NCBI RefSeq assembly: GCF_006345805.1
Contig: NC_043011.1
Span: forward strand, 25,494,464 to 25,558,463
DNA from: Octopus sinensis
Taxonomy: Eukaryota
Reading direction: 5' to 3'
Length of the DNA: 64,000 nucleotides
Positions 21,870-63,093 of this stretch are shown here, in pieces. Position 1 is the first letter of the stretch. Each line of letters opens with the position of its first letter. The translations under genes were made by a program, and so were the position numbers. Under the pieces are notes generated by a model, which searched no databases, was not told where the DNA came from, and was given only the letters and a program-made list of their open reading frames with translations.

Positions 21870-21917
21870 ATGGCAGAAAAGATGTGGGATAATTTACTCC
21901 AATGTATATTTTTACAG
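21870..21917 (+). CDS. EB/EGF-like module protein, coding exon 1 (start of signal peptide)
   Basis: ATG at 21870, MAEKMWDNLLQCIFLQ, then a strong donor CAG|GTAATT in phase 0. Joins exon 2 to give a hydrophobic signal peptide. Confidence 0.65.
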
Positions 21918-24538
21918 GTAATTACTGCAATTATTGTACAGATAACACTGTAACAATTTTTTTTGTTACTCCCTATTTGCTTCTATCAAGAAATCAAAGG
22001 AAATGCTTTTGTGACCTGGACATCAATGCTTTGAAACTGACTTATTTTCTCATTATATTTCAGACAGATATTCAGTGCTGAGTTGCTGAAGCAAAAATAT
22101 TGATATAGCAAATATTCTGCTCAATACCACAAATTTGTTTGTAAGTTGCTTGACCGTAAACACTTGAGTATGTCCATTAGTGGCTGACAATATATGCTTC
22201 TCTTATCATGAGCAGGAGCAGTTGGGGAGCATCATAGTGATGTGTTGAGAGGGATTCTTTTGGATTTGAATAAATATCATAACAAAAGCAAAGTTTGAAG
22301 GAATATTAGCCATTTTTCATATTTTCTAGAGGTAAGCAAATAGGAAATAAGAGTTGCTACTCAAGGACAAAAATCGTGTTACACATTGTAATTATTTCTT
22401 AATCTTCTTTAAATTAGTGGCATAGTAAAAGTTTCCAGTGCCTGAGGGTTGGGTTGTAAAATCACTTCTAGTGCTCCCACCAAGACAGGTTTGATAGATC
22501 CAGAGGAAATGTTGTGTGCCTTTATACCTGAAGCTGGAGTTGCCTGACCTTTTCTCATTTTCTCACTTGTCCTCTGGTTTATATTCATAACAAATATATT
22601 TTTATCTTTTAATTGTTTTAGTGATTTAACTGTGGCCATACAAGGGCACCACCTTGAAGGGCTTGAGTCATGCAAATTGACCCTAAGCCTATTTTCATTT
22701 TGTTTTTAAAGCCTGGTACTTATTTTATTGAACTTTTTTGTCGAATTGCTAATTTACTGGGGCATAAACACACCAACACTGGTTGTCAAGTGGTGGTGGT
22801 GGGGGACAAACACAGACACAAAGACACACATACATAAAAATATACATATACATACATACATATACATATATATAAATACATATATATATATATATAATGG
22901 GCTTTCAGTTTCTATCTGCCAAATCCACTCACTAGACATTAGTTGCCTTGAGGCTATAGTAGACAACACTTGCCCAAGGTGCCACATAGTGGGGTTGAAC
23001 CCAGAACCATGTGGTTGGTAAGCAAGCTTCTTACCACACAGTCATGGTTATTTCTATTTTATGTTTTTTTTTATAAAATTTTTTCTGCCTTCCAGGGTGA
23101 CCATCACCCTGGGAGGAAACTTTTCCTTAGACCAGAGAATTGAACTGAAAAAGCTTGTAACAGGATCAAGGGCCAGGTGATAGAGTTAACCTTTTAGAAT
23201 TTAAACCAGCCACATCCAGCTCAAATATTCTGTTTTATGTTCACACTGACTAGATCTGGCTTCTTACACCTACCTTACAATGTCGTTATAAAAATAAACA
23301 ATCACATCATCAAATTATCAAAGTCATGAGATAATGCATGGTTAATCCAAAACAATGTGAATAGATAAGCATTATATTTGAGAGAGTAATCTGAATGCTA
23401 ATGGCTTAAACTAGGTAACAAAGTAAGTGTTAACAATAGTTATGGACTTATTTGTACAGATATAGTCCATACAATAAGCCTTTGCACAAATTTCATAATC
23501 TACACACTTTTATTGGCAAGGGTTGGGTTTATTTGAGATTTTCATTAAAGGCATTTCCACAAAATTCCACACAACTGGATCAAATCTTGAAACTGGAACT
23601 ACATATTCTGGAGCTAATTCCTTAATTAGCTGATCATATTTGCACTTAAGCTGAAACAACGGAAGAAAAAATGTAGATGAGTGATTTTTAATCAGGGTAC
23701 TGTTATATCTTAGTGATGGCATAAAGCATTTGCTAGATATTTTGTTCCTAATATATGCACTATGCCAGAAGTTGTGTGTGTGTGTGTTGAATAAATTGAC
23801 CCTGATTTTTGACTTGCATTTGTTTTATTGATCCCCGGAAGAAGGACAAAAGGCAAAGTTTATCTTGGCGGGATTTGAATTCTTTAGTTTCTAGAAAGAC
23901 TAAAGAATCCTCTCTGTTCCATGTTGTCTCCATTTGTTTAGAACAATGTAATTAAGAGAGCGAGAGTGTGTGAGATAGATACTTAGATAATAAATAGATA
24001 GATAGGTATAGAGAGAGGGAGGAAGAGAGAGAGAGAGAGAGAGATGAAAGAGAATAGAAATAGAAAAATGGCACAAGTGGTATGATAGGAGAATAGCAAT
24101 TGGAGTGAATGAGAATGATGGAAGAAGGAAGGATAGTGTGTGAGAGAGAGAGAGATAGAGAGCGAGGGAGAGAAATGGAGGCAAAGAAGTCTGTCATAAA
24201 CCCTAGGGCTCATAAAACTGGACCTTAACCTGGTTTCCATAGCATGGCATATCATATAAGGGATGAGATTACAACACTTACCCTGCACTGGACAAAAATC
24301 ATGTTACAGTGGGTAATTACCAAAACAAAACTAAAAAAACGCAACTAAAACAACTACCAAAACTGGTACCAAATGTTATTTTCTATATCTGACAAGATAA
24401 GGAGAATAGATTAGTTGTATGTCATCAGCCTTAGATTGGTAAACAGAATCGGAAAAGATCAGCATTTAATGTTTTTAATCATAATGCCTAATCTTTTTTT
24501 TCTTTTATAATTTATGTATGTGTTCCTTTTCTTTACAG

Positions 24539-24572
24539 GTTTTGTTACTATTTCCATTAATATCTGCTCAAG
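24539..24572 (+). CDS. EB/EGF-like module protein, exon 2 (end of signal peptide)
   Basis: Polypyrimidine acceptor CTTTTCTTTACAG, VLLLFPLISAQ(G), donor AAG|GTAAGA. Runs phase 0 to phase 1, matching the phase-1 start of the next exon. Confidence 0.7.
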
Positions 24573-26145
24573 GTAAGAGTCCTGTATACTAATAATTACA
24601 TATATAAAATACTGAATTCCTTCAATTGAGATTTCTTTCAATCTTTTTACACAAGTCTTTCCTCTACTCAGTACTTTTGAATGATATTCTGTGTAGACAG
24701 AGGCATTGTTGTGTGGTAAGAAGCTTGTAGGTGGTGGTGCTGGTGGTGAAAGAAAGAGAGTTCTTTCGAATAGTGGAGTCCTGTTCAGAAAAACATTACA
24801 ATTATATCTTTTGGTGCCCCGACTTGCGACTGAGGGATTGCCTGCAGGCGGCAAGAGAATTGATAGGGGATGATTGAAGAGACTTGGTGTCTCAGTCTGG
24901 GTAAGAGGTTATTGCCTCATTTTTGTGTGTTTTTCGTTGTAGAAAATAAAAAGAAAATTTGTAATGAAAACTAAAGAAAGAGGTTTAATACCTCATTTTG
25001 TTTTTTAAAAAGAATAATGTATTACAGAAGCAAAAAATCGGCTGGCGTTTTTTGTCTTCTCCCATCAACATCATTTTTTTCCTCTTTTTTCATCATTCAT
25101 CTCATTAATGTTTCTGTCCAATCCGCAAGCTACTCCTTGTAATGCTGTCATGGCAAATTTGATGAAATAAAGAAGCTTGCTTCCCAGCCACATGGTTACA
25201 AGTTCAGTCCTCCTGCATGGCACCTTTGGCAAGTGTCTTCTGCTGTAGCCTTTGGCCAACCAAAGTCTTGTGAGTGGATTTGGCGAAGAAAGAAACCTGT
25301 CATATATGTGTGTGTATGTGTGTGCGTGCATGTGTGTGTGTGTGTTTGTCCCCCTACCACTGCCTCCAATCTAGCGCAGTGGATTAACACAGCTCTTAGA
25401 GGGTTGGATGAGCAAGATGTTATATAATGTCTGTTCTAGCTCTTTCTTGTTTTCATGCTCAAATTCTGTCTTGGCCTGCTTACTTAACTGGTTAACATAA
25501 TCCATCAATTGGTTTGACACAACTGCCTGATACCTGGGTTGCTTTTAATGGAGCACATTTTGCTTTTTGCATTCAGGTCACACTTCTAGTGTGAGAATAC
25601 CTTTGTTTCTTCCACCATTCAGGGATGACTTGTAGAGGATCATGGGTACTGTCTTTTCACCTGAAAAATGGAAAAAAAAATTATGTGGGCATGGCTGTGT
25701 GGTTAAGAAGTTCACTTTGCAACCATATCATTTTGGGTTCAGTCCTACTGCATGGCACATTGGGCAAGTGTATTCCACTATCGCCCCCAGCCAGTAAAAG
25801 CCTTTTGAGTGGATTTGAGTGACAGAATCTGTTTGGAAGCCTGTTGTACACACACACACACACACACACATGTATATGTGTGTGTGTGCTTGCATGTGCC
25901 CCACTCCCACAGCTTGGCAACTGGTGTCGGTTTGTTTATGTCCCCGTAACTTAGCAGTTTCAGAAAAGAGACCAAGGAATAAATATCAGACTTACAAAAA
26001 AAAAAAAAATATTGGTTTTGATTTGTATGACTAAACCCTTCAGGATGATCCCCCCCCCTTCATAGCTGCAGTCCAAAGACAAACAAATAAAAGGTAAAAA
26101 AATGAAAGATGTATACTGTATGCCCTGAAACTATTATGAAGGGTT

Positions 26146-26413
26146 GAGTTCGATTCCCAGCGACGCGTTGTGTCCCTGAGCAAGACACTTTATTTCACGT
26201 TGCTCCAGTCCACTCAGCTGGCAAAAATGAGTTGTACTTGTATTTCAAAGGGTCAGCCTTGTCACTCTCTGTGTCACGCTGATTTTCCCCGAGAACTACG
26301 TTAAGGGTACACGTGTCTGTGGAATGCTCAGCCATTTGCACGTTAATTTCACGAGCAAGCTGTTCCGTTGATCGTATCAGCTGGGACCCTCGTCGTCGTA
26401 ACCGGCGGAGTCT
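26146..26413 (+). mobile_element. 5'-truncated SINE with 12-bp TSD
   Basis: TTATGAAGGGTT at 26134-26145 and 26414-26425. Confidence 0.85.
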
Positions 26414-27479: not shown

Positions 27480-27522
<43 letters not shown>

Positions 27523-27613
27523 TTTTCTTCTTCTCTAGTTTCAGCTCAGAGCTGCGGCCATGCTGATGCACCGGCGTTTAAGAAAATATGTATGAAAAAT
27601 AAAGTAGCTAAAC

Positions 27614-27685
27614 TGCCGTGACCAGGATTCGAACCTGGGTTACCATGGCCACAACGTGGGGTCCTAACTACTAGACGATCACGGC
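27614..27685 (-). tRNA. tRNA-His-GTG: tRNA-His (anticodon GUG), variant or possible pseudogene
   Basis: GCCGTGATCGTCTAGTAGTTAGGACCCCACGTTGTGGCCATGGTAACCCAGGTTCGAATCCTGGTCACGGCA. Acceptor stem and T-arm are intact and a T5 terminator lies about 15 nt downstream. Deviations: G18 to A in the D-loop and a C30-A40 mismatch in the anticodon stem. Confidence 0.85.
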
Positions 27686-27716
27686 TGACAGATCGTATAT
27701 ATATATGTGTGTGTGT

Positions 27717-27754
<38 letters not shown>

Positions 27755-28759
27755 TTGTGTATGTGTGTGTGTTTGTTCACCCCCCTCCATCGCTTCACAA
27801 TCGATGTTGGTGTGTTTACGTACCTGTAACTTAATGGTTCAGCAAAAGACACTGACAGAACAAGAACCAGGCATACAAAGAATAAGTCCTGGGGCCGATT
27901 CGTTTGGCTAAAGGCAGTGCTCCAGCATGGCTGCAGTCAAATGTCTGAAACAAGTAAAAGAATAAAAGAATATTTTCATTATTGATTGTGAGAGATGAAG
28001 CAAGCTGCAGTGTGTGAATAGAAAGTAGATAACTCTGACTCTATGAAACAAATAAGATCCAATGAAAAACTTTTACTTTATGTAATGTGTGCAATTTTCG
28101 CTGATTAAAACCTTTATTTATTTGACACTCACTATGCTCAGTATAATAGCTTGCATTTAACTATACAACTTTTATGCAGTGTCAATGTCATTGCTTTGTA
28201 TAACAATATCATTGCTTAGCTTGTTATTGCTCTAGTTATTTTCAACAATATTAGAATAACTACCGAGATTTATATGTACTGTACCATATACCAGGCGTCC
28301 CCAACCACTGGGTTGTGGGCCAGTACTAGACTGTAGGCTGGTTCCTGGCTGTGGATCATTTGGTAGGAGGCTGCACAGAAAGAATGAATTTTTAAAATTT
28401 CATTCCTACATTACTGACTACCATAATCTGCAGGGTGTTTTTATATTATATATGTATTCTACATGCAATATATATATATATATATATATTATGTAGTATA
28501 TATGTATTATTACCTACATGTGTAAGGCAGTGAGCTAGCAGAATTGTTACCTCTCCAGGCAAAATGCATAGCAGTATTTCATTCCTCTTTATGATCTGAG
28601 GTCAAATTCCACTGAGGTCAACTTCGTCTTTCATCCTTTCAGGATCAGTGAAATGAGGATCAGTTGAACACTGGAATTAATGTAATCAACTATCCTTCTT
28701 CCACTAAATTTTAGGCTAAAAGAAATGAGTGCATAGATGGTCAGTATAATGTGCAATAT

Positions 28760-31543: not shown

Positions 31544-31592
<49 letters not shown>

Positions 31593-32726: not shown

Positions 32727-32867
32727 TTCCCTTAATATTTAATCGTTGCCGTCTCAGTTCAGAATGTCCACTGCATTCAACTTGCATGGCCAGATCATGT
32801 GATGGCTACATTTGCATATGTGACTCTGGCTTCAGACATTCTTTTGACAGGACAAGATGTGTTCCAG
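32727..32867 (+). CDS. EB/EGF-like module protein, exon A1 (7-Cys domain)
   Basis: TTTCAG acceptor, 141 nt, (V)PLIFNRCRLSSECPLHSTCMARSCDGYICICDSGFRHSFDRTRCVP, donor G|GTAATC. Confidence 0.9.
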
Positions 32868-34282: not shown

Positions 34283-34364
<82 letters not shown>

Positions 34365-36360: not shown

Positions 36361-36663
36361 CTTCCAACATCCTTGAGAAATGTGACTTTTCTGACAATTG
36401 CCCCCCAACATTCTCTGTTTGTTTGTTTCGTCAATGTGTTTGCCGTGATGGACTGGAAGCCACAGAGAACAAAACATGTAGGGGAAGAGCAGAGAGAGCA
36501 CTTGGATACAGGTGTAATATTGAGAATGGCTGTACCTACCCAAATCTTCAATGTGTGAGTGGCATTTGTCAGTGCAGAGCAGGCTATAGAAAGAAAACTG
36601 ACATTGAAATACAGGCTTTGCCTTATGATATGTTTGAGTGTATTACAACAAACTACAATCTGA
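36361..36663 (+). CDS. EB/EGF-like module protein, exon B1 (two 6-Cys EB modules)
   Basis: AACAG acceptor, 303 nt, SNILEKCDFSDNC...MFECITTNYNL, donor A|GTAAGT. C-x5-C-x6-C-x4-C-x-C spacing occurs twice. Confidence 0.92.
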
Positions 36664-43059: not shown

Positions 43060-44515
43060 TAGGCCGTTCGCCAGCCTCATCTGGCACCTGTGCCGGTGGC
43101 ACATAAAGACACCATCCGAAGACCCGGCGACGTAGTCAGTCCACCTGTGCATTCCTTCCCTCTTATGACACTTGTGAAGACCTGTTGAGGCAAGTGTGTG
43201 ACACTTGTGAAGACCTGTTGAGGCAGAGGCAAGTGTGTGACACTTGTGGAGACCTGTTGAGGCAATGTGTGACCCTTGTGAAGACCTGTTGAGGCAAGTG
43301 AAAATCAAACCAAATCAAAATAGATGAATATCAATGGAATTTGTATCTTTGTGGTTCCAAACCGGTGGCACACAAGAAAACCATCCGAACGTGGCCGTCG
43401 ACTGGCCTCCGTGCTGTGGGCACAACAAACACCATCTGATCGTGGCCGTTCGCCAGCCTCACCTGGCACCTGTGTCGGTGGCACATAAAAACACCACCAC
43501 CATCCAAAGACCCGGCGACGTAGTCAGTCCACCTGTGCTTACCTTCCCTCTTATGACACTTGTGAAGACCTGTTGAGGCAGAGGCAAGTGTGTGACACTT
43601 TGTGAAGACCTGTTGAGGCAGAGGCAAGTGTGGACACTTGTGGAGACCTGTTGAGGCAAGTGGTGACACTTTGTGAAGACCTGTTGAGGCAGAGGCAATG
43701 TGTGACACTTGTGGAGACCTGTTGAGGCAAGTGTGTGACACGCGGACACTTGTGAAGACCTGTTGAGGCAAGTGAAATCAAACCAAATCAAAATAGATGA
43801 ACATCAATGGAATTTGTATCTTTGTGGTTCCAGTACCGGTGGCACACACGAAAACCATCCGATCGTGGCCGTTCGCCAGCCACATCTGGCACCTGTGTCG
43901 GTGGCACATAAAGACACCATCCGAAGACCGGCGACGTAGACAGTCCACCTATGCATACCTTCCTTCTTGTGACACTTGTGAAGACCTGTTGAGGCAAGTG
44001 AAAATCAAATCAAATCAAATCAATCAAATCAAATCAAAACAAATCAAAATAGATTGAACATAAATGGAATTTGTATCTTTGTGGTACCAGTGCCGTGGCA
44101 CACAAGAAAATCATCCGAACGTGGCCGTAGCCAGTACCGCATAGACTGGCCTCCATGCTTTGGGGACGTAACAAATACCATCCGATCGTGGCCGTCCGCC
44201 AGCCTCATCTGGCACCTGTGTCGGTGGCACATAAAAACACCATCCGAGCGTGGCCGTCTGCCAGCCTCGTCTGGCACCTGTGTCGTGGCACATAAAACAC
44301 CATCCGAGCGTGGCCGTTCGCCAGCCTCGTCTGGCACCTGTGTCGGTGGCACATAAATCACCCACTACACTCTCGGAGTGGTTGGCGTTAGGAAGGGCAT
44401 CCAGCTGTAGAAACACTGCCAGATCTGACTGGCCTGGTGCAGCCTTCGGGTCCCCAGACCCCAGTTGAACCGTCCAACCCATGCTAGCATGGAAAACGGA
44501 CGCTAAATGATGATG

Positions 44516-47705: not shown

Positions 47706-47999
47706 ATGAATGTAACCAAATTCCTTTACCAGCCATTCCTGGGTTAACCTCAACAGTTTCTCCTGTTTCTCAGTCAACAGTACAAAATAATTCAGTTTCT
47801 CGTGGTGTCCCTGTCCCACGGTCACCTAATCGGAAAACTATTCCAAATAACACTTTTATAACTCGTTTGTATGGAAACTGTACTACACATAAAGAATGTC
47901 CTGAATTTGCAGAATGTAGGCCATTAGCATGTGAAGGCTATGTCTGTATATGTATTGAAGACTTTGTGCCAGCCAGAAATTCTACAGTTTGTATTAAAA
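47706..47999 (+). CDS. EB/EGF-like module protein, exon A2 (orphan Cys + S/T/P linker + 7-Cys domain)
   Basis: TTGCAG acceptor, 294 nt, ECNQIPLPAIPG...CTTHKECPEFAECRPLACEGYVCICIEDFVPARNSTVCIK, donor A|GTGAGT. Confidence 0.92.
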
Positions 48000-50671
48000 G
48001 TGAGTACACATCCCTTTTTCTTTTTTTATTTCTTATCTTTTACATGCTTCAGTCATTGAATTGTGACCATGGTACTTATTCTCTCAGACTCTCTTACCGA
48101 ACTGCAAAGTTATTGGGACATAAACAAACCAGCAATGGTTGTCAAACAGTGGAATGGGGAAAGCACAAACAAAAACACACACATACACACATGCACATAT
48201 ACACACAAGCACACACACTCACATATATACATATATGCATGCATCACACACATACACACAAACACACACACATATATGCATGCATGCACACACACATATA
48301 TATACGCATGCACCCATGCACACACATGCATGTATATACATTGGGCTTTTACTCAGTTCCTGTCTACCAAATTCACTCACAAAGCATTGGTTAGCCTGGA
48401 GCTGTCATTGAATACACTTGCCCAAGATGTCACATAGTAGGACTGAACCTGAAACCATATGGTTGCTAAGAGAGCTTCTTAACCACGCAGTCATGCATGC
48501 AACTACCTGAAAAAAATCTTTAGTAAATTTTCTCACTGCTCCCTGTTGAGTTTAGAGAGTTGTTAGAATGTCAAATGGTATTCCTTGCTGTATTTGTTCT
48601 AGAACTCTCTGCCCTGAGTTCAAATCCTGCCAAGGTCAACTTTGCCTTCCATACTTATGAAGTTGTTAAATAAGGCATAAGTCCTTTTTTTCTTTACCTA
48701 AGTCCTTTGCCCTTTAGGGAATATACCATCATCATCATCATCATTTAATGTCCATTTTCCATGCTGTCGTAAGTCAGCCATCAGTAACTTTTTCCCCACT
48801 GTTCTGGGCCTATGACTGACTTTTCTGCTTCTCTGCAGTTGAATTCTCTCCTTTTCCCTTTCAGGTTTTGCTGCATTGCTTCAAATGTTTCCCCGAGAGA
48901 AGGACTTCCTCTCCCAGTTTTTCTAGTTCAATGCTTCTGTATTTTTGCTTTCTTTTGGTAGGGCTTTAAGCAAATCCATTTTTACCTCTGGGAATAGGTG
49001 GTTCTTATTAGCCTAGTATCTGTCCTTTCACTGATCCAGCATGTCATAGCTGGCATAACTCTCAGGGTCATCAAGGCATACGCTGCAACAAGGTCTTGAC
49101 CTTACAGTCCAGTACTGGAGTCAGTTCTTCTTTTCATCCCATCCTTCTGTCTGTCAATCTGTCTATCTCTGTCTGTCTGTCTCTATCTGTCTGTATGTCT
49201 GTCTCTATCTGTCTGTCTGTCTATCTGTCTATCTGTCTATCTGTGTCTGTCTGTCTCTATCTGTCTGTATGTCTGTCTCTATCTGTCTGTCTGTCTATCT
49301 GTCTGTTTGTCTCTCTCCCTTTCCCTCTCCCTCTCCCTCCCTCCCACTCTCCCTTTCTCTCTCTCCCATGACTGAAGTAGGATGGGCTCTGCCAACTTTA
49401 AAATGTTTGAAGTATTTTATATGACATGATGGTGCTCTTGTGACTTCATCAGTTGTTGATAGCCCACATAAACAACAAAGGATTAATACTGTATGTATCC
49501 TGAGTCAAGCAGTTCAAGATTTAGTGATGACAGTGGTGATTATTACACTTGTGAACCAAATATATCATGATTCATTCTACTCTTGTAATTGATCACTTAG
49601 AGACTGAAGTTTTGATTTTTTAAAAATCTGAAAGAAATATGTTTTTGTACAGCCATCAGTATCCTACTTAATATAAATACATTGTAAAAAAAACAAATTT
49701 ACTATGGTATTTGTCTAGAGATAGTATCTCTTACAGTATAAGCTGTTTAAAAACACAAATTATTTCAGTAGCCAATGAAGATCATCCTGAAGTGGAAGAT
49801 GAAAATGTTAGATATGCATTTCTGCCTTGTATAGCTTTGTCAGTAGCATGAAGCCATTGCCAACTACATGCAAAGATGAAATCCCTTGATCAGAGCGACA
49901 AACTGGCCTCCGTGCCGGTGGCACGTAAAAAGCACCATTCGAGCGTGATCGTTACCTGCGTCGCCTTACTGGCACTTGTGCTGGTGGCACATGAAAAAAC
50001 ATTCAAGTGAGGTCATTGCCAGTGCCACTAGACTGGCTCCTGTGCAGGTGGCACACATAAAGCACCATTTGAGCGTGGCCATTGCCAGTCCTACCTGACT
50101 GGCCCTCATGCCGGTGGCACGTAAAAGCACCCACTACACTCTCAGAGTGGTTGGCGCTAGGAAGGGCATCCAGCTGTAGAAACTCTGCCAGATCACACTG
50201 GAGTCTGGTGCAGCCATCTGGTTTGCCAGACCTCAGTCAAATTGTCCAACCCATGCTAGCATGGAAAGCGGATGTTAAACAATGATGATGATGATGACTG
50301 TTATAGGGAAACAAAGACTGAACAATCACTGAAGTTGCAATTAGCTGTCTTGTTGAATAAGAGTCCACTATATGAACAGAAACAGCATTATAGTTTTATC
50401 CATTACTGAAATAGTTTGTATTTATAAATACAGCATATCTATAAGAGATACTATTGCTAGATGAATACCACATGAAATTTGTCTTTTCATGTTATGTTTA
50501 CATTAAGTAAGTGCAGGCATGGCTGTGTGGCAAGAAGTTTACTTTCTAATCACATGGTTCTGGGTTTAGACCTCCTGTAAGGAAGCTTGAGTGAGTGTCT
50601 TATACTACAGCCTTGGGCCAATCAAAGCCTTTTGAGTGGATTTGGCAGACGGATACTGAAAGAAGACTGTC

Positions 50672-50722
<51 letters not shown>

Positions 50723-51008: not shown

Positions 51009-51311
51009 AATCAAGACTTTCCGAAATATGTGAAGTTGACGAGCAATGCCCAGGAGAATTTTCGTTTTGCACAAATGGTCTCTGCACATGCACAGCAGGT
51101 CTGGAAACAATTGATAATATCCATTGCAGTGTTCCAGGAACATCACTGCATGGTTACCAATGCAATAGTACAATAGTCTGTGCCATTCCAGATACAAGTT
51201 GTAGGAATGGGGTTTGTTCCTGCATCTCAGGTTTACGTCCCAAAACAATTGAAGAGTTTGCTGCATACCCAAATGAAATTTGGAGCTGCATTGAAGAAGG
51301 GTTTTCTTTGA
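51009..51311 (+). CDS. EB/EGF-like module protein, exon B2
   Basis: TTTCAG acceptor, 303 nt, SRLSEICEVDEQC...IWSCIEEGFSL, donor A|GTAAGT. Confidence 0.92.
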
Positions 51312-51399
51312 GTAAGTTTATCCCATTTTTCACTCATTATACTAAAGAAACTCCCTATAAAATAGAAAAAAATATGAAATAATCAAAATGCATTCTTAA

Positions 51400-51619: not shown

Positions 51620-52307
51620 TTAAAGCATATATTTCTTATTTCATGAAATTATGGTGGTGGTGGTGATGGTGGTAGGGGTTGTTGAGTACACTACTACCAC
51701 CACCACCACCACCACCACCACCACCACCACCACTGGTTTCAAATTTTGGTACAAGGCCAGCAATTTTTAAAGAGAGGTGGGCAAGTTGATTACATCAACT
51801 CCAATGCTCAACTGGTTCTTATTTTATCAATCTCAAAAGGATAAAAGGTGATGTGGACCTCAGTGGAATTTGAACTCCTGGCCAGCCTGGTGAGGGTGCC
51901 AGTATAGTCAGCAAGGACCTGACCATGCAATAGTTTGTACTAGATTCCATATTACCTGCAGCAATCACGAGAGACTTCACAAGTGACCTGACATTGATGG
52001 AAATGATGATGAGGTTCAGAGACTCTTGTCCTGCAAAGCAAAATATCCACAGCATATAACTGTACAGAGAGCTGTCAGTTGTGCAGCAGAACCTAGCACT
52101 TACATATTATAAGAATACAAAATCTCTACTACAGTGATCACTCAGAGTACTTGGCAGGATGGTCCTGCTCATGATATTCAAGCTGCCATTAAGGCTCAAT
52201 AGTTACCAGCAGAGCCGCAAGTGTAAAATATAATTTTGTCTGAGTGCACAGTGTTCTTAGTGGTTAGTGATGGTCTTTCTTAGTCATGAGTGGACAACCA
52301 TCATCAT

Positions 52308-52680
52308 GTATGTATGTATATATGTATGTATGCATGTATGTATGTATGTATGTATGTATGTATGTATGTATGTATGTATGTATGTATGTATGTATGTATG
52401 TATGTATGTATGTATGTATGTATGCATGCATGCATGCATGTATGTATGTATTTATGAATGTATGTATGTATGTATGTATGTATGTATGTATGTATGTATG
52501 TATGTATGTATGTGTACGTATACGTAATATATATGAATGAATGCATGTATGTATGTGAGCATGTATGTATATATGTATGTGTGCATGTATGTATGTAATG
52601 TGTATGTATGCATGTATGTATGTATGTATGTATGTATGTATGTGTGCATGTATATAATATGTATGAATGTATGTATGTAT
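52308..52680. repeat. (TATG)n microsatellite just upstream of exon A3
   Basis: Read directly. Confidence 0.95.
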
Positions 52681-52741
52681 GTAGCACATAGACAGTTGTA
52701 TGCTAACATTTTAAATTGCTTTTTAATGTTTTATGTTTCAG

Positions 52742-52951
52742 ATGAATGCAATCATGTGGTGATTCCAATACCAAAACAATTAAATGGTTCACAACATCAG
52801 ACTTTTGGCAATACAAGTCTTGAAGATAGATGTTACAGCAATGACGATTGTCCTTTCCATGCTGACTGCCAACCTCGAAGTTGCGATCTTTTCATTTGTA
52901 TCTGTTCTGAAGGATATAGACAATCACCTGATAGGTCAAGATGTGTAAAAC
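52742..52951 (+). CDS. EB/EGF-like module protein, exon A3
   Basis: TTTCAG acceptor, 210 nt, ECNHVVIPIP...CYSNDDCPFHADCQPRSCDLFICICSEGYRQSPDRSRCVK, donor C|GTGAGA. Confidence 0.9.
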
Positions 52952-53866
52952 GTGAGAATATTTAAGATTAATTTTACAATTTGATATTAGAATGTTTCAT
53001 ATTGTTTGATGAAATCGAAATTGGAATCAAATTCGATGACTGGCATCCGAGCTAGTGGAGTGCTAAGAGCACCATACATACGTGGTCATTGCCAGAGCAA
53101 CAAGCTGGCCTCCGTGCCGATGGGCACGTAAAAAGCCCCATTCGAGTGTGATGGTTACCTGTGTCACCTTACTGGCACTTGTGCTGGTGGCACATGAAAA
53201 AACATTCGAGCGAGGTCGTTGCCAGTGCCACTGGACTGGTTCATGTGCAGGTGGCACATAAAAATCACCATTTGAGCGTGGCAGCTGCCACTATCACCTG
53301 TCTGGCCCTCGTGCCGGTGGCACATAAAAGCGCCCACTATACTCTCGGAGTGGTTGGCATTAGGAAGGGCATCCAGCTGTAGAAACTCTGCTTGATCAGA
53401 TTGGAGTCTAGTGCAGCCATCTGGTTCACCAGACCTCACTCAAAACGTCCAACCCATGCTAGCATGGAAGGCGGACGTTAAACGATGATGATGATGATGA
53501 TGATGATACCCCGCTATCTCAATAACTTGGTAATATTAATCTTATCTTTTTATCTTTCATTTTTTATTTGTTTTAGTCATTAGACTGTGGCCATGCAGGA
53601 GTACCACCTTGAAGGGTTTTAGTTGAAAAAAATTCACCCCAGTATTTATTTTTAAGTATAATAATCATTCTGTTCTTTCAGTCTCTTTTGCTGAACTGCT
53701 AAGTTACGTGTATGAAAACAATCCCACACCACTTGTTAAGTGGTGGGGGAGGGGGACAAACACAAACACAAAGATGCACACGCTTAGCAGTTCAGTAAAA
53801 GAGATCAGTGGAAAAAGTGCCAGACTTAAAGAAAACAAGTACTGGGACCTATTTGTTTGACTAAAC

Positions 53867-54498: not shown

Positions 54499-54801
54499 TG
54501 TCCAAGCTTGGAGAGTCATGTAATAGTGACCTAAACTGTCCAAATGAATTTGCAGAGTGTACTTCTGGACAGTGTGTGTGCAAAGAGAATTTTTCACCAG
54601 TCTCAGACATGTATTGCAAGTATGCCGGAACTGTTGTTTATGGAGATGCTTGCAATGCCACTAATTCTTGTACTTACCCAGATACTGAATGTAATAATCG
54701 CTCATGTCAGTGCCAAGAAAACTTCCGAGAGAAAACTGCCCAAGAAAGTCGTTCTTTTCCCGAGTTGATGTTTAGTTGCATCAAGAAGAATTTTTCATTA
54801 A
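54499..54801 (+). CDS. EB/EGF-like module protein, exon B3
   Basis: TTTTAG acceptor, 303 nt, SKLGESCNSDLNC...LMFSCIKKNFSL, donor A|GTAAAT. Confidence 0.92.
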
Positions 54802-56045: not shown

Positions 56046-56999
<954 letters not shown>

Positions 57000-57325
57000 A
57001 TATAATATAGATAATATATTTATGTATACACACACACATATATATGCATATATGGGTACAGGACATCACCAACAGTAAATGACATGAAATAAGAAAACAA
57101 ATGAGTTAAATATGCAGATAATGAGAGAAATAAAAAGGACAAATAATACATAGAATGACCCTTCATCAGTCATCAGCTGTGTATCTACTCCCCATTTCGA
57201 GCAATCAACAAGTTCAAATAGAAAGGCATGGCTTATGTTGCAGCTGTCTTGATTCTGATTTGGCAGCTACCTTGGTCTTCTTTTTAGGCTCAAAATAGAC
57301 TGTCACATGACACTAATCTACAAGC

Positions 57326-58209
57326 GTAGGGGGAAACGCACAAAAGATTATAAATTTAATTACGTGTTCACTCTCTACAAACACTTTACAGAAAACATTC
57401 AGAGCATTGATTGTTTGGATATGCTCAGTGAACCATATCAGCCTTAACTTACAATGCCAAACATTGTCACTTGAACATAGCAATAAACCTACAAAAATTT
57501 CTAAGACCAGTTATGTGACTATCTTCTAACAATCAAATCCTATTCAAAACATATACTAATTTGAGCCATGAACTCCCTATGAAAATATGGCAAGCTTCAA
57601 ACACTAGTCAGAAGCAAGACAGCTGCAATATAAGCCACATCTTTCTATGTGAGCTTTTTGAAAATCAGTGTTAAACTCTGAAACCGGTTAAAGCTTTAAA
57701 TATATTAATAAAAAATAACTTAACTATTCTCAGTGCATTTTCAACCTGTGTCAAATAAAATAACTTTGTAGGGGGAAACGCACAAAAGATTATAAATTTA
57801 ATTACGTGTTCACTCTCTACAAACACTTTACAGAAAACATTCAGAGCATTGATTGTTTGGATATGCTCAGTGAACCATATCAGCCTTAACTTACAATGCC
57901 AAACATTGTCACTTGAACATAGCAATAAACCTACAAAAATTTCTAAGACCAGTTATGTGACTATCTTCTAACAATCAAATCCTATTCAAAACATATACTA
58001 ATTTGAGCCATGAACTCCCTATGAAAATAGGGCAAGCTTCAAACACTAGTCAGAAGCAAGACAGCTGCAATATAAGCCACATCTTTCTATGTGAGCTTTT
58101 TGAAAATCAGTGTTAAACTCTGAAACCGGTTAAAGCTTTAAATATATTAATAAAAAATAACTTAACTATTCTCAGTGCATTTTCAACCTGTGTCAAATAA
58201 AATAACTTT
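57326..58209 (+). repeat. 442-bp direct tandem duplication
   Basis: 57326-57767 versus 57768-58209; one substitution seen (AAAATATGGC vs AAAATAGGGC). Confidence 0.95.
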
Positions 58210-58214
58210 GTTTT

Positions 58215-58251
<37 letters not shown>

Positions 58252-58252
<1 letters not shown>

Positions 58253-58612
58253 TAGCAGTATTGCCCAGCGTTACTCGGGTTTGTTTTGACCCTTTAGAAT
58301 TGGAATTATTGAAAAGTAAAAATTTTGCATTATGTAGCTTGTTATTTTCTTTAAGTGAACATTTTTCTAGTTGAAATACATCAGAAAATGGCGACACAGC
58401 AGTCAAACAATCGTAAAAAATAGGGATTTTCATAGAAAAAAAGTACCTTTTTGATGTAAATAATTTTTGGTCTTAAAATTTTATTTTCTACGGAAGGAAG
58501 AGCAAGCCTTCTTCTATCATACTCTCAATTTTGGTCAACTTGCGCCGCAGGGTCACGGAGGAGATAGTGTAAGTTGAAGGCTACCAAACCTGCCATACAC
58601 AGACAACTTCAG

Positions 58613-58640
<28 letters not shown>
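58252..58640 (-). mobile_element. Non-autonomous Helitron
   Basis: Minus strand ends CCCGAGTAACGCTGGGCAATACTGCTAG, the same 3' end as 19154-19537; inserted in (TA)n. Confidence 0.7.
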
Positions 58641-58658
<18 letters not shown>

Positions 58659-59035
58659 GCACACATAAATATGTATATATGTGTGTGTGTGTTTTTTAGG
58701 TATGCACGTATGTGAGTGTTTTTGTTTCTTTGTCATGATATCATGTAATTGTACATGAACTTCAGTCATTTCCAATATTCCAGGAAAACTTATCTGGCCA
58801 TGGGGAAGTAATTGCTTTGCTTAGAAGCAGGTAAGGATTGGTGACAGGGTGGGCCACTGGCTATAGAAAACTACTCCAATAAAAACTCTGTTAGACCCAT
58901 GCTTGCATTAAAAAATGAAAGTTAAACTGATGATGATGATAATGATGATGATGATGATGATGATGATATTTCTTATTGAATTTACAGAATCTAGAGGATT
59001 ATAGACAGTTCTCTTGCTCTTTATTATTATGATAG

Positions 59036-59284
59036 ATATGTGCCAAGGAATTCCAGTCACAAACTTGTCTCAGTCACAAACGGAAGAAGTTAGCAGTGTG
59101 GTGTTCAGCAGATTTAAACGTGATGTCCCTACCATCCAACAGAAAGTTAAAATTTATGAAAACTGCAGCGAAGATACAGATTGCCCAGAAGATGCATCAT
59201 GTGTTGCACACAAATGCAATGATTACAGATGTGTGTGTAGTACAGGTTACCAACCATCAACTGATAAGAATACTTGCATACGAG
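59036..59284 (+). CDS. EB/EGF-like module protein, exon A4 (contains RFKR furin-type site)
   Basis: GATAG acceptor, 249 nt, MCQGIPVTN...SRFKRDVP...CSEDTDCPEDASCVAHKCNDYRCVCSTGYQPSTDKNTCIR, donor G|GTTGGT. Confidence 0.88.
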
Positions 59285-59895
59285 GTTGGTTAAATACTTA
59301 AATTAAAGAATTTTTGTCAGTCTAGGGGTGGAATTAAATATGAAGGAATGAAAAAAGTTAAAAAATAAAAATAAAATTAATGACTTGTAAGGATACAGTA
59401 TTTGGTTATGAAACCATTTGGTTATGTATTTGGTTATGCAACGATGATATTTTACAAAGTATATTAAATGCTTTTATAAGTCAATACAGTGTTCTACTGT
59501 GTTAGCAGTGCTATTACATCACTTCTTAAGGTTATCTCTACAGATTTTCTTTAGAAATTATATCCAGCACTGGTTTTGTTATGTTGTTTCATAAGGTTAA
59601 CTGGTAAAAATGAAATAGGATATTGTTCCTTTAAAGAAAGGTAAGTCTGAAGAAGAAATAATATCTATTAAAAAAAAAAGAAGAATTGGTTCCATTTGTA
59701 TGCCACTGTCGATTTATGACTTAATATTAAGGTGGAAGAAAATGATTAAGGGAAGCTGCTTAGATACTGACTGTTTGGCACCACTGAGTAGACATTTAGC
59801 CTATTTTGGCGATAGTACATTTTGAGCCTGGAGGTGGAAAATACATACACATGTATGAGGGTGCAGGAATGTACACATACAGATAAAAAGAGAGA

Positions 59896-59958
<63 letters not shown>

Positions 59959-60150
59959 TGAAACATCTGAGGTCAAATAAATTAGCATTGAATAATCAGT
60001 GGTACCAAACAAGTGGATTGAAAACAGTTGTGCCAAAGCGTCTCATCTCCTATTAAGAATAGTTAAACATGGTCAACTTGGAACATTTACTCATGAACAA
60101 AAACTGTAATAATCGTTTGAATTTCTTGTATTATCTAATACTTTTTTCAG

Positions 60151-60450
60151 TGGCCCAAATCGGTCAGCCATGTAATAGGACTGTGAAGTGTGATCCATCT
60201 ATAGCCGAATGTAGACCAAGTGGAAAGTGTGACTGCAAATTTCCTCTATTGCTTCAGAATAACTACTGCGCTCTTCCAAATAAGTTACTCTTAGGAGAAA
60301 ACTGCACCTATTCTAACCAATGTGATGTAAGTCACAGACTTTATTGCTTTGAGAGTTCCTGCCAGTGCTTGCCTGGATTAATCTCAGCACCTGAGATAGA
60401 GAAAGATTTTGTCTTCAACCATATGTGCCTTCCACAAAATAATTCTTTTG
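60151..60450 (+). CDS. EB/EGF-like module protein, exon B4
   Basis: TTTCAG acceptor, 300 nt, AQIGQPCNRTVKC...NHMCLPQNNSF, donor G|GTAAGT. Confidence 0.92.
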
Positions 60451-61782
60451 GTAAGTAAATGATAAGTCCTCCCATCAACCAATAAAATGTTTTAAACAGT
60501 TTTAATTGCATTTAATCTCATTTGTTGGTATTTTCTTTTTTTTTAAGAATAACAATAGCCTGGGCAAAGTTCAGAGAGCTCCTACCTCTGCTGGTGACAA
60601 AGTTGTATCCAGCCCAAATATTATATCTGTTTTATGCACAGATTGGCCATATTCAGTCTCTCATACCTACCCTACAATTCTAAAAATAAGCTATCACATC
60701 ATCGAAATTCCAAAACAAAAATATAATGCATGAATATTTCAAATAATGGGTTCATATTTTGGCATAAGGCCAGCAATTTCAGGGAGGGATCAATTTGATT
60801 ACATCAACCCCAGTACTCATCTGGTACTAATTTTATCAACTTCAAAAGGATGAAAGGCAAAGGTGGAATTTGAATCTGAACATAAAGATGGATGAGACGT
60901 TGTCAAGCATTTTGCCTGGCGTGATAACGATTTTGCCAGCTCACCACCTTTTGAGTAATTCAAAATAATGTGAATAAATAAGCATTACATTTGGTAAGGT
61001 AATATGAATGCTAAAGGGTTAATGTATGACAGGTGCAGGTGTGGCTGTGTAGGTTAGAAGTTTGCTTCCCAACTACATGATTTTGGGTTCAAACCTACTG
61101 TGTTGCATCTTGGGCAAGTGTCTTTTACTTATAATCCCAGGCCAGCCACTATCTTTTGACTAGATTTGGTCACTAGAAAGAGTGAGAGGCGAGCTGGCAG
61201 AAATGTTAGCACACTAGGCGAAATGCTTAGCAGTATTTTGTCTGCCATTACGTTCTGAGTTCAAATTCCGCCAAGGTCGACTTTGCCTTTCATCCTTTCG
61301 AGGTCGATAAATTAAGTACCAGTTACGCACTGTGGTCGATATAATCGACTTAATCCCTTTGTCTGTCCTTGTTTGTCCTCTCTATGTTTAGCCTCTTGTG
61401 GGCAATAAAGAAATAAGATAGAGTGAGAGGCTTTGGCTGACCCGACCCAGGACAATAGTAGAAGACACTTGCTTAAGGTGCCATACAATGGGATAGAACT
61501 TGAGATCACATTGTTGGGAAGCAAGCTTCTTAACCACACACCAAGGACTACTATAATGGACATTTGATGTTCAGGACATATGTTGGCCCACAATTCATTG
61601 AAAAAAAAAAAAACCCAGAAAAGAAGTTCTTGTAGAATAGTTTTGGAAGAAAACAAACAAGAACAAGACAGAAGTTTCTAGTTTATAAATTTTGTTTATA
61701 CAATTATTTTGTGTTTATTTGTTGCTTTCTTCAAGATTTTCCTTTACAAATAATCATGGACTGTTTATTTTATTCCTTTCAG

Positions 61783-62064
61783 ACCCATGCAGCAATGCTT
61801 CCTCAACAGAAGAACTGTTTGAGCCAACAAGAATTACATATTCAAAGTCAAATTATAGTGAATTAACAGGCTGGCGTAATGCCTCAAAGTTAAATTATAC
61901 TGAATTCTCACATTGGGTTAATACCTCAAAATTAAATAATAACAATGATAATGATGATAGTAATGATGATGATAATAACAATAATGATGATGATAATGGT
62001 GATGATGATGATAACGATGATGATAATAATAATAATGATAGCATTAATAACAGCACAAATAAAG
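61783..62064 (+). CDS. EB/EGF-like module protein, exon C (orphan Cys, N-glycosylation-rich and Asn/Asp low-complexity spacer)
   Basis: TTTCAG acceptor, 282 nt open frame PCSNASSTEELFEP...NNSTNK, donor G|GTAAGT; phase 1-1. Confidence 0.8.
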
Positions 62065-62880
62065 GTAAGTCATAAATGAAATTTAGTTTTAGGAAAATGA
62101 AAATTTCACATTTGAAAATGAGAATGAGTTATGTTTGGTAGTTTGTGTTATGAAATGGCATACTATGAAAAATATAATATTCATGTAATTGCTCTCAATG
62201 ACAACTAAAATCTATGGAAGTAAAATCTAATTCAGTAACTAACAAGTGTTAGTTACTGAATTAAAAAAAAATGGAAGTTGAAAATAAAAGCAGCTTTCCT
62301 ATTGCAAGGCCAAAAAATATTTTGATGGAAAATAGTTGTGGTCCTTGGTCCATAGGCAGGCTATTGATGTGCCTCTCCCAGGACTAGTTAGTTTTTAAAT
62401 GTTTCTGTAACTTTGATTTTCTTCTAAGTAGGGATGTTGGCTCTATGCAAACCCATTTTACCCCTGGGAAGAAGTGATCCATATTAGTTTGGCCTTTATC
62501 CTTTGATCTGACCTGCATGGGAGGCCCTACCTGGAACTGTAATTCAGAGTCACTGAGGTGCCCAGGCTACCATATTGCAACAAGAGCTTGACCTTCCATT
62601 TGACTGGTTTCTTTACAATTCCCCTCTATCTGAATTTACCTGCAATACCTTGGTTAACTGGATCTCAGATGTTTTAGATATATGTCCATTAAGCGTAACA
62701 TTAGGTTTTCTATAAGTCAGGACTGATATAAAGTTCACAAAAACATTGTATTATACAAAATCTGTTGGAAGACTTGTTTGTGTATCATTTATGTGTAATT
62801 TTTGTATATATTAATATTTGAAATATTTCATATTAATAATTGAATGAATTTAATAATATTGTATTATTTTATATTCATAG

Positions 62881-63093
62881 AATCTTCAATACAAATTGAA
62901 AGTTTACTGGAATATGATGAAAATATCACTATGGAAATAGCAGATATACAAGTATCAACACAAAATATTGGATCAAACTGCACAACAGACATTCATTGTT
63001 CCAGCAACAGTGTTTGTACTCAGAATTCTTGTGGCATATACTTGTGTACATGTCGTAAAGGTTTCTTTGAGATAGAAGGGCTTTGTAGAAAAG
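62881..63093 (+). CDS. EB/EGF-like module protein, exon A5 (gene continues beyond window)
   Basis: CATAG acceptor, 213 nt, SSIQIESLL...CTTDIHCSSNSVCTQNSCGIYLCTCRKGFFEIEGLCRK, donor G|GTATGT; no stop codon. Confidence 0.9.

What the first reader, a model, noticed from the sequence alone, without database searches (positions are those of the whole stretch)
21870..63093. Uncharacterised secreted protein built from a repeating two-exon supermodule (A+B)x4+
After a signal peptide the exons alternate A1-B1-A2-B2-A3-B3-A4-B4-C-A5. All are phase 1-1 and multiples of 3; the B exons are 303, 303, 303 and 300 nt. B holds two EB-type 6-Cys modules, the second with a long insert (R-x-KT-x2-E-x4-P in B1-B3). 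A holds a C-x5-C-x5-C-x4-C-x4-C-x-C-x10/13-C domain. The ~200-aa unit arose by tandem duplication of an exon pair and then diverged strongly. I recognise no named orthologue with this architecture, so it may be a mollusc or cephalopod lineage-specific matrix or surface protein family.
Basis: partly seen in the sequence, partly recalled or inferred. Interest (0 to 1): 0.75.

Follow-up and report, generated by a model that had tools for sequence, protein, structure and literature searches.

The report
Octopus membrane protein of repeated EB modules
The exons are real and form one Octopus sinensis gene for a sugar-coated, cysteine-rich cell-surface protein, but it is membrane-anchored rather than simply secreted, is already a predicted database entry, and belongs to an unstudied family found across molluscs and in an annelid, so it is a fairly ordinary find.

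Summary
My splice-site model on the + strand reproduces exactly the first 893 residues of the RefSeq prediction XP_036365453.1, "fibrillin-1-like", from Octopus sinensis (1095 aa). It has 12 exons in the window, at 21870-63093, and every exon from A1 onward is phase 1-1.

Five more exons lie 1.6-8.7 kb past the window. They encode B5, a Ser-rich stalk, a transmembrane helix and a short tail. The protein is therefore a type I membrane glycoprotein with five A+B units, not merely a secreted one.

Each B exon holds two EB modules above the Pfam threshold. Each A exon holds one divergent EB/EGF-like module with an extra cysteine.

The same A|B phase-1 exon pair occurs in Argonauta, a chiton, a scallop and the annelid Owenia. 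Protein relatives also occur in oyster, abalone and freshwater mussels. The unit is therefore old and not cephalopod-specific.

AlphaFold models the A+B core as one rigid unit (pLDDT 93, pTM 0.77). No solved structure resembles it beyond generic tandem EGF domains.

Two inferences are new: a disulfide staple from the extra cysteine in A to a cysteine just after B, and a conserved furin-type site before unit 4. Function is untested. "Fibrillin-like" is a misnomer. Interest is modest.

The parts
21870..21917 (+). Exon 1: start codon and first half of the signal peptide (MAEKMWDNLLQCIFLQ), phase 0-0
   Evidence: Exact match to residues 1-16 of XP_036365453.1; donor GTAATT
24539..24572 (+). Exon 2: second half of the signal peptide (VLLLFPLISAQ), 34 nt, phase 0-1.
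   Evidence: Found by exact peptide match; AG/GTAAGA borders
32727..32867 (+). Exon A1: 7-Cys EB/EGF-like module, 141 nt, phase 1-1
   Evidence: Pfam EB 16.6 bits, below threshold on its own
36361..36663 (+). Exon B1: two EB modules, 12 Cys, 303 nt, phase 1-1
   Evidence: Pfam EB 41.3 bits, 2 stretches
47706..47999 (+). Exon A2: staple Cys (codon at 47711), S/T/P-rich linker and A module; 294 nt, phase 1-1
51009..51311 (+). Exon B2: two EB modules, 303 nt, phase 1-1
   Evidence: Pfam EB 46.3 bits
52742..52951 (+). Exon A3: staple Cys (52747), linker and A module; 210 nt, phase 1-1
54499..54801 (+). Exon B3: two EB modules, 303 nt, phase 1-1
   Evidence: Pfam EB 44.2 bits. The A3 core plus B3 was modelled at pLDDT 93.4.
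59036..59284 (+). Exon A4: staple Cys (59041), linker and A module; 249 nt, phase 1-1
59110..59121 (+). Codons for RFKR (residues 571-574): the only furin-type R-x-K/R-R site in the ectodomain, in the linker before unit 4
   Evidence: Conserved at the aligned position in Argonauta (RSRR|DV) and in an O. bimaculoides fragment (RFKR). About 0.18 sites are expected by composition. Cleavage itself is inferred.
60151..60450 (+). Exon B4: two EB modules of the second subtype (CKFP...LP.K), 300 nt, phase 1-1
   Evidence: Pfam EB 33.3 bits
61783..62064 (+). Exon C: staple Cys of unit 4 (61788) plus a long linker; 282 nt, phase 1-1. It corresponds to the N-terminal part of exons A2-A4 and to the separate staple exons of scallop and Owenia.
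61935..62036 (+). Asn/Asp-rich low-complexity tract inside exon C, encoded by an imperfect trinucleotide repeat
   Evidence: TRF array 61936-62039; translation. Argonauta has a longer, more Asn-rich tract here.
62881..63093 (+). Exon A5: rest of the linker plus an A module (7 Cys); 213 nt, phase 1-1. Last exon inside the window.
   Evidence: Pfam EB 24.3 bits, at the cutoff. The next exon (B5) lies about 2.5 kb downstream, outside the window.

Best explanation
What is shown: the region is the 5' three-quarters of a single 17-exon Octopus sinensis gene (RefSeq prediction XP_036365453.1, automatically named 'fibrillin-1-like').

The protein is a type I membrane glycoprotein laid out as follows:
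- a signal peptide;
- five A+B units;
- a Ser-rich stalk with one small Cys pair;
- one transmembrane helix;
- a cytoplasmic tail of about 25 residues with no recognisable motif.

Each unit has one 7-Cys EB/EGF-like module (A), two 6-Cys EB modules (B) and one further Cys 8-10 residues after B. That makes 20 Cys per unit.

The array arose by tandem duplication of a phase 1-1 exon set that predates the mollusc-annelid split. The octopod copies fall into two subtypes, units 1-3 and units 4-5.

What is inferred:
- The three modules of a unit pack into one rigid body.
- That body is closed by a long-range disulfide between the extra (4th) Cys of A and the Cys just after B.
- The rigid bodies are joined by flexible, N- and O-glycosylated linkers, so the ectodomain is a long beaded rod projecting from the cell surface.
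- The most likely role is passive extracellular binding, adhesion or surface coating rather than signalling, because the tail is short and featureless.
- A proprotein convertase probably cuts at RFKR574. This would release units 1-3 as a soluble fragment and leave units 4-5 on the membrane.
For: Gene model:
- The window exons match the RefSeq protein exactly, and the downstream exons were located in L002.
- An independent Argonauta hians annotation has the same 17-exon chain. It is 60% identical and keeps 103 of 104 Cys.

Domains: EB PF01683 scores 190 bits over 13 stretches.

Membrane anchor: there is a hydrophobic helix near residue 1046-1054, followed by RKK, in both octopods. Many relatives also have a C-terminal TM.

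Conserved exon pair:
- Scallop B exons are 294-303 nt, phase 1-1.
- The first Owenia B exon is 345 nt, phase 1-1 (the second unit's B is split into 200 + 136 nt).
- The chiton alternates exons of about 240 and about 315 nt.

Rigid unit: AlphaFold2 with 54 aligned units gives pLDDT 93.4 and pTM 0.77 for the 146-residue core.

Staple disulfide:
- Each unit has 20 Cys.
- A Cys lies within 12 residues after B in 37 of 59 units that have the extra A Cys. It does so in 0 of 10 units that lack it.
- 18 of 20 N-terminal first units carry the extra Cys with no upstream partner.

Glycosylation and linkers: there are 29 N-x-S/T sequons and S/T/P-rich linkers. Cores are 66% identical between the two octopods and linkers 43%.

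Furin site.

Independent lineage expansions: NJ tree.
Against: - There are no expression, localisation, glycan, disulfide or cleavage data; function is pure inference.
- The staple test is dominated by one chiton protein on the 'no extra Cys' side, so the units are not independent. Also, 22 of 59 units with the extra Cys have their next Cys further than 12 residues away.
- I could not inspect model coordinates, so the predicted disulfide pattern was not read from the model.
- Furin motifs in exposed linkers are not always used.
- RNA-seq junction support for the RefSeq model could not be checked here.
- Relatives combine A+B units with LDLa or Sushi domains and long tails, so function may differ between members.
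Confidence: 0.6

Rival explanations
1. A purely secreted extracellular-matrix protein. It would leave the cell and be built into a matrix, like fibrillin microfibrils or shell and cuticle matrices.
For: It has a signal peptide, EGF-like repeats and glycosylated linkers. RefSeq's automatic name is fibrillin-1-like. A furin site could release units 1-3. The best weak fold matches include fibrillin cbEGF.
Against: All six predicted isoforms and the Argonauta orthologue keep the TM helix and tail. There is no TB/8-Cys domain and no calcium-binding EGF consensus; EGF_CA scores only E = 0.15-0.5. Most full-length relatives also end in a TM.
Confidence: 0.12
2. A phagocytic or pattern-recognition receptor of blood cells. 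It would work like the EGF-repeat receptors Eater/NimC1, Draper/MEGF10 or SCARF1, binding microbes or debris through its repeats.
For: It is a type I protein with many EGF-like repeats, a stalk and a short tail, like Eater (my own knowledge of that family). Automatic names of relatives include MEGF6 and MEGF10. SCARF1 appears among the weak fold matches.
Against: No EMI domain or other defining domain was found by Pfam. The tail has no NPxY or YxxL-type motif (sequence). Fold matches are non-significant (E >= 0.018). There are no expression data.
Confidence: 0.12
3. A membrane-tethered mucin-like barrier or lubricant on epithelia. In this reading the glycosylated linkers do the work and the Cys modules are only spacers.
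For: Relatives have long S/T/P-rich tracts, up to 39% of residues. One is auto-named 'integumentary mucin C.1-like'. The chiton linkers are pure PTS sequence. The octopus protein has 29 N-glycosylation sequons.
Against: Octopus linkers are short (26-123 aa) and only 22-39% S/T/P. The Cys modules are the conserved part and the linkers are not. No SEA domain was found.
Confidence: 0.15
4. A calcium-binding biomineralisation protein (statolith, stylet, or the Argonauta egg case) acting through the Asp/Asn-rich tract of exon C.
For: There is an acidic D/N-rich tract of about 34 residues. EGF-like proteins occur in mollusc shell matrices (my own knowledge).
Against: The tract is a trinucleotide-repeat product and is mostly Asn in Argonauta. 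A membrane anchor is atypical for matrix proteins. The tract is absent from relatives in other classes.
Confidence: 0.04
5. An annotation artefact: the exons belong to two or more separate genes that are wrongly joined.
For: Older O. bimaculoides models are fragments of 183-264 aa. RefSeq carries two names for isoforms that share these exons.
Against: All exons have compatible phase, and Cys parity holds only when units are joined. An independent Argonauta model is collinear. Only one gene is on record over this range. The O. bimaculoides fragments read through splice sites into introns, as seen by comparing.
Confidence: 0.03

Closest known systems
EB module proteins (Pfam PF01683), first defined in C. 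elegans; automatic names such as 'prion-like-(Q/N-rich) domain-bearing protein 25'
   Same: There are clear HMM matches (190 bits for the whole protein), with the same 6-Cys EGF-like spacing and an extracellular setting. A C. elegans ectodomain survey treats EB modules as not separable from EGF domains (bioRxiv 10.1101/2024.07.08.602367).
   Different: Here the modules come in fixed triplets (A+B). Each triplet has an extra staple Cys pair, a conserved helical R-x-x-T-x-E insert before the last Cys of B, glycosylated linkers and a TM anchor. No Kunitz domains accompany them. Arthropod EB arrays found in the same search lack the signature at the end of B.
Unnamed A+B-unit proteins of other lophotrochozoans: Liolophura XP_064595761 and XP_064595758, Argopecten XP_069102134, Mizuhopecten XP_021340469, Magallana K1PRW9, Haliotis XP_046547180, Owenia CAH1788588
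   Same: They share the same 19-20-Cys unit. Where genomic DNA was checked (Liolophura, Argopecten, Owenia), the A|B intron position and phase are the same. Most have the signal peptide, linkers and C-terminal TM layout.
   Different: Unit number ranges from 1 to 13, and units cluster by lineage, so the arrays expanded independently. Some members add LDLa or Sushi domains or long tails with IPRP.V motifs. Some chiton units lack the staple pair. None is characterised.
Fibrillin (the RefSeq name)
   Same: It is an extracellular protein with many EGF-like repeats. Fold matches to cbEGF pairs are weak.
   Different: There are no TB/8-Cys domains and no calcium-binding EGF consensus. It is about 1100 aa rather than about 2900. 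It is membrane-anchored. The name is a similarity artefact.
EGF-repeat type I surface receptors (Drosophila Eater/Nimrod, Draper/MEGF10, SCARF1) and Dumpy
   Same: The overall plan is the same: signal peptide, many small disulfide-rich repeats, TM and a short tail. A exons give weak sub-threshold hits to the Dumpy DPY module (E = 0.007-0.015).
   Different: None of those families' defining domains (EMI, NIM consensus, ZP) was detected. The resemblance is architectural only.

Membership tests
EB module (Pfam PF01683) | HMM score at or above the gathering cutoff of 24.3 bits | tested here: met
   The whole protein scores 190.1 bits over 13 stretches. Each B exon alone scores 33-46 bits. A exons alone score 14.7-24.3 bits, so only A5 reaches the cutoff.
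Fibrillin | TB (8-Cys) domains interspersed among the EGF repeats | tested here: not met
   No TB hit in Pfam scans at E <= 1
Fibrillin | Arrays of calcium-binding EGF (PF07645) | tested here: not met
   EGF_CA scores only E = 0.15-0.54, at most 12.8 bits against a cutoff of 27
Draper/MEGF10-type receptors | N-terminal EMI domain and a signalling tail (NPxY / YxxL) | tested here: not met
   No EMI hit. The tail SRKKCNLFYFPSSRSNIERRNPSRL has neither motif.
Nimrod/Eater | NIM repeat consensus (CxPxCxxxCxNGxCxxPxxCxCxxGY) | not tested
   No model for it was available. The Cys spacing 5-5-4-4-1-12 / 5-6-4-1-11 does not look like NIM, judged by eye only.
Dumpy-like apical matrix proteins | DPY modules (PF21164) and a ZP domain | tested here: not met
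   DPY scores 15.7-16.7 bits against a cutoff of 27. No ZP hit.
Membrane mucins | Long PTS tandem repeats and a SEA (or equivalent) domain | tested here: not met
   Linkers are 26-123 aa and 22-39% S/T/P. No SEA hit.
Lophotrochozoan A+B-unit family (unnamed, defined here) | Unit of a 7-Cys A module plus a 12-Cys B module, with the R-x-x-T-x-E...C end | tested here: met
   A local HMM finds five near-full units in the octopus protein. The same unit occurs in chiton, bivalve, gastropod and annelid proteins.
Lophotrochozoan A+B-unit family (unnamed, defined here) | Phase-1 introns at the A|B border and after B | tested here: met
   Octopus, Argonauta, scallop and Owenia. For the chiton only exon positions were mapped, not phases.
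Lophotrochozoan A+B-unit family (unnamed, defined here) | Disulfide between the 4th Cys of A and the Cys after B | tested here: inconclusive
   Co-occurrence is 37/59 against 0/10, and Cys parity is 20 per unit. There is no direct structural or chemical evidence.

The most novel reading that the evidence does not exclude
The A+B triple-EB unit defines an un-named family of cell-surface proteins that predates the mollusc-annelid split. The family is built from a conserved phase-1 exon set, and each unit is locked by a long-range staple disulfide. In octopods the protein would be cut by a furin-type protease into a shed three-unit fragment (subtype 1) and a membrane-bound two-unit fragment (subtype 2) with separate roles.
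Probability: 0.3. Interest if true: 0.4.

Novelty: new variant of a known kind. Interest (0 to 1): 0.3.

Why it matters
**What is corrected**
- It corrects a misleading database name. The protein is not a fibrillin.
- It shows that a repeat that looked lineage-specific is an old, widely shared lophotrochozoan building block with a fixed exon structure.

**What it is useful for**
- Annotating mollusc and annelid genomes, where these proteins now carry a scatter of unrelated automatic names (MEGF6, MEGF10, fibrillin-2, integumentary mucin, prion-like protein 25).
- Serving as a clean example of exon-set duplication.

**What becomes testable**
- The predicted staple disulfide.
- The conserved furin site.

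**Limits**
- It does not open a long-standing question.
- Cysteine-rich EGF-like repeat surface proteins are common, and nothing here points to an unusual mechanism.

Tried and rejected
- **Word-indexed protein search.** The first search, with the 771-aa model, found only the Octopus and Argonauta clusters. The searches with the 54-unit alignment and with the C-terminal 245 aa returned nothing, not even the query's own cluster. Squid and Nautilus orthologues therefore remain untested. The exhaustive HMMER search supplied all the relatives instead.
- **Solved structures.** The PDB sequence search gave only marginal EGF-like hits (RIPR, E = 6e-4) and spurious RNase hits. Foldseek against the PDB with both models gave nothing below E = 0.018. 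No solved structure of this unit exists.
- **Literature.** Searches for the accessions, 'fibrillin-1-like' with octopus, 'domain-bearing protein 25', 'EB module' and 'EB domain-containing protein' found no functional study.
- **Extra exons.** I looked for further A or B exons or pseudo-exons in the introns and upstream 21 kb. None scores better than E = 0.003.
- **Arthropod hits.** I considered the arthropod hits (Cloeon, Darwinula) as family members and rejected them. They are generic EB arrays without the signature at the end of B, and one is an adhesion-GPCR-like protein.
- **Furin sites elsewhere.** I checked other family members for linker furin sites. None is comparable, so the site is octopod-specific.

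Full report

The window is AT-rich animal DNA full of microsatellites.

I placed splice sites by AG/GT, polypyrimidine tract and reading phase. This gave:
- A1 32727-32867
- B1 36361-36663
- A2 47706-47999
- B2 51009-51311
- A3 52742-52951
- B3 54499-54801
- A4 59036-59284
- B4 60151-60450
- C 61783-62064
- A5 62881-63093

All are phase 1-1 and multiples of three.

In tblastn of the exon peptides against the whole window, the B exons hit one another at E = 3e-20 to 2e-27. B4 hits them at 0.04 to 4e-9. The A exons hit one another at 1e-15 down to 7e-4, though not every pair matches. Nothing else in the 64 kb scores better than E = 0.003.

Cys spacings are nearly identical between copies.

Three small corrections apply. 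The signal peptide is split into two exons (21870-21917 and a 34-nt exon at 24539-24572). The last Cys gap in A is 12 residues (10 in A5), not 13. The array continues outside the window.

**2. What gene is it?**

A protein search returned an identical Octopus sinensis RefSeq prediction and one Argonauta hians protein. The cluster holds six O. sinensis isoforms, named 'fibrillin-1-like' or 'uncharacterized protein LOC115219958'. It also holds three short O. bimaculoides fragments.

The twelve window exons, joined, translate exactly to residues 1-893 of isoform X1 (XP_036365453.1, 1095 aa).

The public contig (CM016873.1) is identical to the window where they overlap. It shows five further exons 1.6-8.7 kb past the window end: B5 (300 nt), a Ser-rich linker, a stalk with two Cys, a transmembrane exon and a tail exon.

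The last 202 residues contain LAPIAAAVLILLLFIAIMVY followed by SRKK and a tail of about 25 residues. This is therefore a type I membrane protein with five A+B units.

Only one gene is on record over this range, so the two RefSeq names refer to isoforms of one gene. The short O. bimaculoides models start or end in intron sequence (compare) and are fragments.

**3. Domains and structure**

Pfam finds only EB (PF01683): 190 bits over 13 stretches. Taken alone, each B exon scores 33-46 bits with two stretches. Each A exon scores 14.7-24.3 bits, at or below the cutoff of 24.3, with equally weak cEGF, MSP1-EGF and Dumpy-DPY hits. So B is two EB modules, and A is a divergent EB/EGF-like module with one extra Cys.

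A published survey of C. elegans ectodomains concluded that EB modules cannot be cleanly separated from EGF domains (bioRxiv 10.1101/2024.07.08.602367).

AlphaFold2 was run twice:
- On A3+B3 with ten aligned units it gave pLDDT 79, with a disordered linker.
- On the 146-residue core with 54 aligned units from many species it gave pLDDT 93.4 and pTM 0.77.

The second result indicates a defined packing of the three modules rather than loose beads. The conserved R-x-K-T-x-x-E insert forms a short helix.

Foldseek against the PDB found nothing below E = 0.018. The best weak matches are tandem EGF proteins: NELL2, EMR2, MSP1, Pvs25/Pfs28 and fibrillin cbEGF. A PDB sequence search was equally empty.

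**4. Relatives and age of the unit**

An exhaustive HMMER search of 1.84 billion representatives gave 110 hits, 11 of them below 1e-30.

The named top hits are all molluscs:
- the chiton Liolophura sinensis (2126 aa with 12-13 units; 1429 aa with 7-8 units)
- the scallops Argopecten and Mizuhopecten
- the freshwater mussels Potamilus and Sinanodonta
- the oyster Magallana
- the abalone Haliotis

The annelid Owenia fusiformis follows, with two units. All names are automatic and mutually inconsistent.

A local HMM of the unit shows 1-13 near-complete units per protein, S/T/P-rich linkers and usually a C-terminal TM. Some members add LDLa or Sushi domains. Arthropod hits are generic EB arrays without the signature at the end of B.

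I then mapped gene structures:
- Argonauta has the same 17-exon chain as Octopus.
- In the scallop and in Owenia the A|B border and the end of B carry phase-1 introns at the same places. Scallop B exons are 294-303 nt. The first Owenia B exon is 345 nt, and the second unit's B is split in two.
- In the chiton, exons of about 240 nt (linker + A) alternate with exons of about 315 nt (B), exactly as in octopus.

The exon pair is thus ancestral to molluscs and shared with an annelid. It is not a cephalopod invention.

In a rough NJ tree, units group by lineage. Octopod units split into 1-3 and 4-5. The arrays therefore grew by independent tandem duplications.

**5. Two inferences from the sequences**

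*(a) A staple disulfide.* A has 7 Cys and B has 12. One more Cys always sits 8-10 residues after B. In octopus it is encoded at the very start of the next A exon, or of exon C. This gives 20 Cys per unit and an even total for the ectodomain.

Across relatives, 37 of 59 distinct units with the extra A Cys have a Cys within 12 residues after B. None of the 10 units lacking it do (Fisher p = 2e-4). Those ten come mostly from one chiton protein, so the test is weak. Eighteen of 20 first units, directly after the signal peptide, carry the extra Cys with no upstream partner. This favours pairing with the downstream Cys.

In scallop and Owenia this Cys lies on its own mini-exon (66-69 nt and 33 nt).

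*(b) A furin-type site.* The ectodomain has a single R-x-K/R-R motif, RFKR at residues 571-574 (window 59110-59121). About 0.18 such sites are expected by composition. It lies in the linker before unit 4.

Argonauta has RSRR followed by the same DV at the aligned position, and an O. bimaculoides fragment has RFKR. The surrounding linker is only about 45% identical. Cleavage there would separate units 1-3 from the membrane-bound units 4-5, which are also the two sequence subtypes. Neither inference was tested directly.

**6. How it most likely works**

*Shown:* one gene, type I topology by sequence, five rigid Cys-rich units, and variable glycosylatable linkers. There are 29 N-x-S/T sequons, and linkers are 43% identical between the octopods against 66% for the cores. 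The tail is short and has no known motif.

*Inferred:* a long beaded rod on the cell surface that binds, adheres or coats rather than signals, possibly processed by a furin-type protease.

I put the gene and protein description at about 0.95 and the functional reading at about 0.3.

The rivals are a purely secreted matrix protein, a phagocytic EGF-repeat receptor, a membrane mucin, a biomineralisation protein and an annotation artefact. They are weighed in their own sections. None has positive evidence beyond general resemblance.

**7. Comparison with known families, and novelty**

It is a member of the EB-module class by the Pfam test.

It fails the tests for:
- fibrillin (no TB domain, no cbEGF)
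- Draper/MEGF (no EMI, no tail motifs)
- Dumpy (sub-threshold DPY hits, no ZP)
- membrane mucins (no SEA, short linkers)

Its true relatives are uncharacterised lophotrochozoan proteins with the same unit.

The gene itself is already a public prediction. What has not been described, as far as my searches show, is the fixed A+B unit, its conserved exon set, the staple Cys pair and the furin site. I rate it a new variant of a known kind, of modest interest.

**8. Surroundings**

- Upstream of the gene the window holds only repeats and retroelement remnants.
- The introns hold microsatellites, a tRNA-His-like sequence and a 442-bp tandem duplication.
- Downstream, outside the window, lies a CRAL_TRIO gene on the minus strand. 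This neighbour is conserved in Argonauta.
- A 623-aa DUF4659 gene model spans the whole locus on the same strand. I did not examine it.

Noticed in passing
window 27614-27685 (-): A tRNA-His (GTG) sequence lies in intron 2 of the gene, next to a (TG)n microsatellite at 27706-27776. Rfam scores it 53 bits and ARAGORN agrees. It could be a real tRNA gene or the head of a tRNA-derived SINE.
   Followed up: partly
window 17175-18286 (+) and 6567-7259 (+): These are open reading frames of retroelement type upstream of the gene. The ORF at 17828-18286 has a sub-threshold match to zf-RVT, the zinc-binding region of reverse transcriptases (E = 6e-5). The other two have no Pfam hit.
   Followed up: partly
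window 57326-58211: A 442-bp unit is present as two tandem copies, 99% identical, in the intron between B3 and A4. It looks like a very recent duplication.
   Followed up: no
window 14980-16059: A microsatellite of about 1.08 kb, (TATGTATGTATG)n, creates long spurious Cys/Met/Tyr/Val 'ORFs' on both strands. A smaller one of the same kind at 52306-52683 abuts the acceptor region of exon A3.
   Followed up: no
window 44173-44362, 49902-50131, 53171-53329: Arrays of a related 60-66-nt unit (…GGCACATAAAA.CACCATTCGAGCG…) recur in several introns. This is probably a dispersed repeat family.
   Followed up: no
L002 1-70830 (= window 11870 onward), + strand: The public annotation has a 623-aa DUF4659 gene model that spans the whole locus on the same strand. 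The EB-repeat gene may therefore sit inside an intron of a larger gene, or that model may be wrong. Argonauta shows no such spanning gene in the stretch fetched.
   Followed up: no
L005 (Liolophura sinensis, XP_064595758 locus): The chiton gene consists of near-identical A+B exon pairs repeated about every 1.15 kb, with two alternating variants. This indicates very recent tandem amplification or ongoing homogenisation.
   Followed up: partly
P0013 (Argopecten) and P0015 (Magallana) cytoplasmic tails: Bivalve family members have long cytoplasmic tails that share an IPRP.V motif (FKIPRPNV, LRIPRPHV, CEIPRPMV). The short octopod tail lacks it.
   Followed up: no
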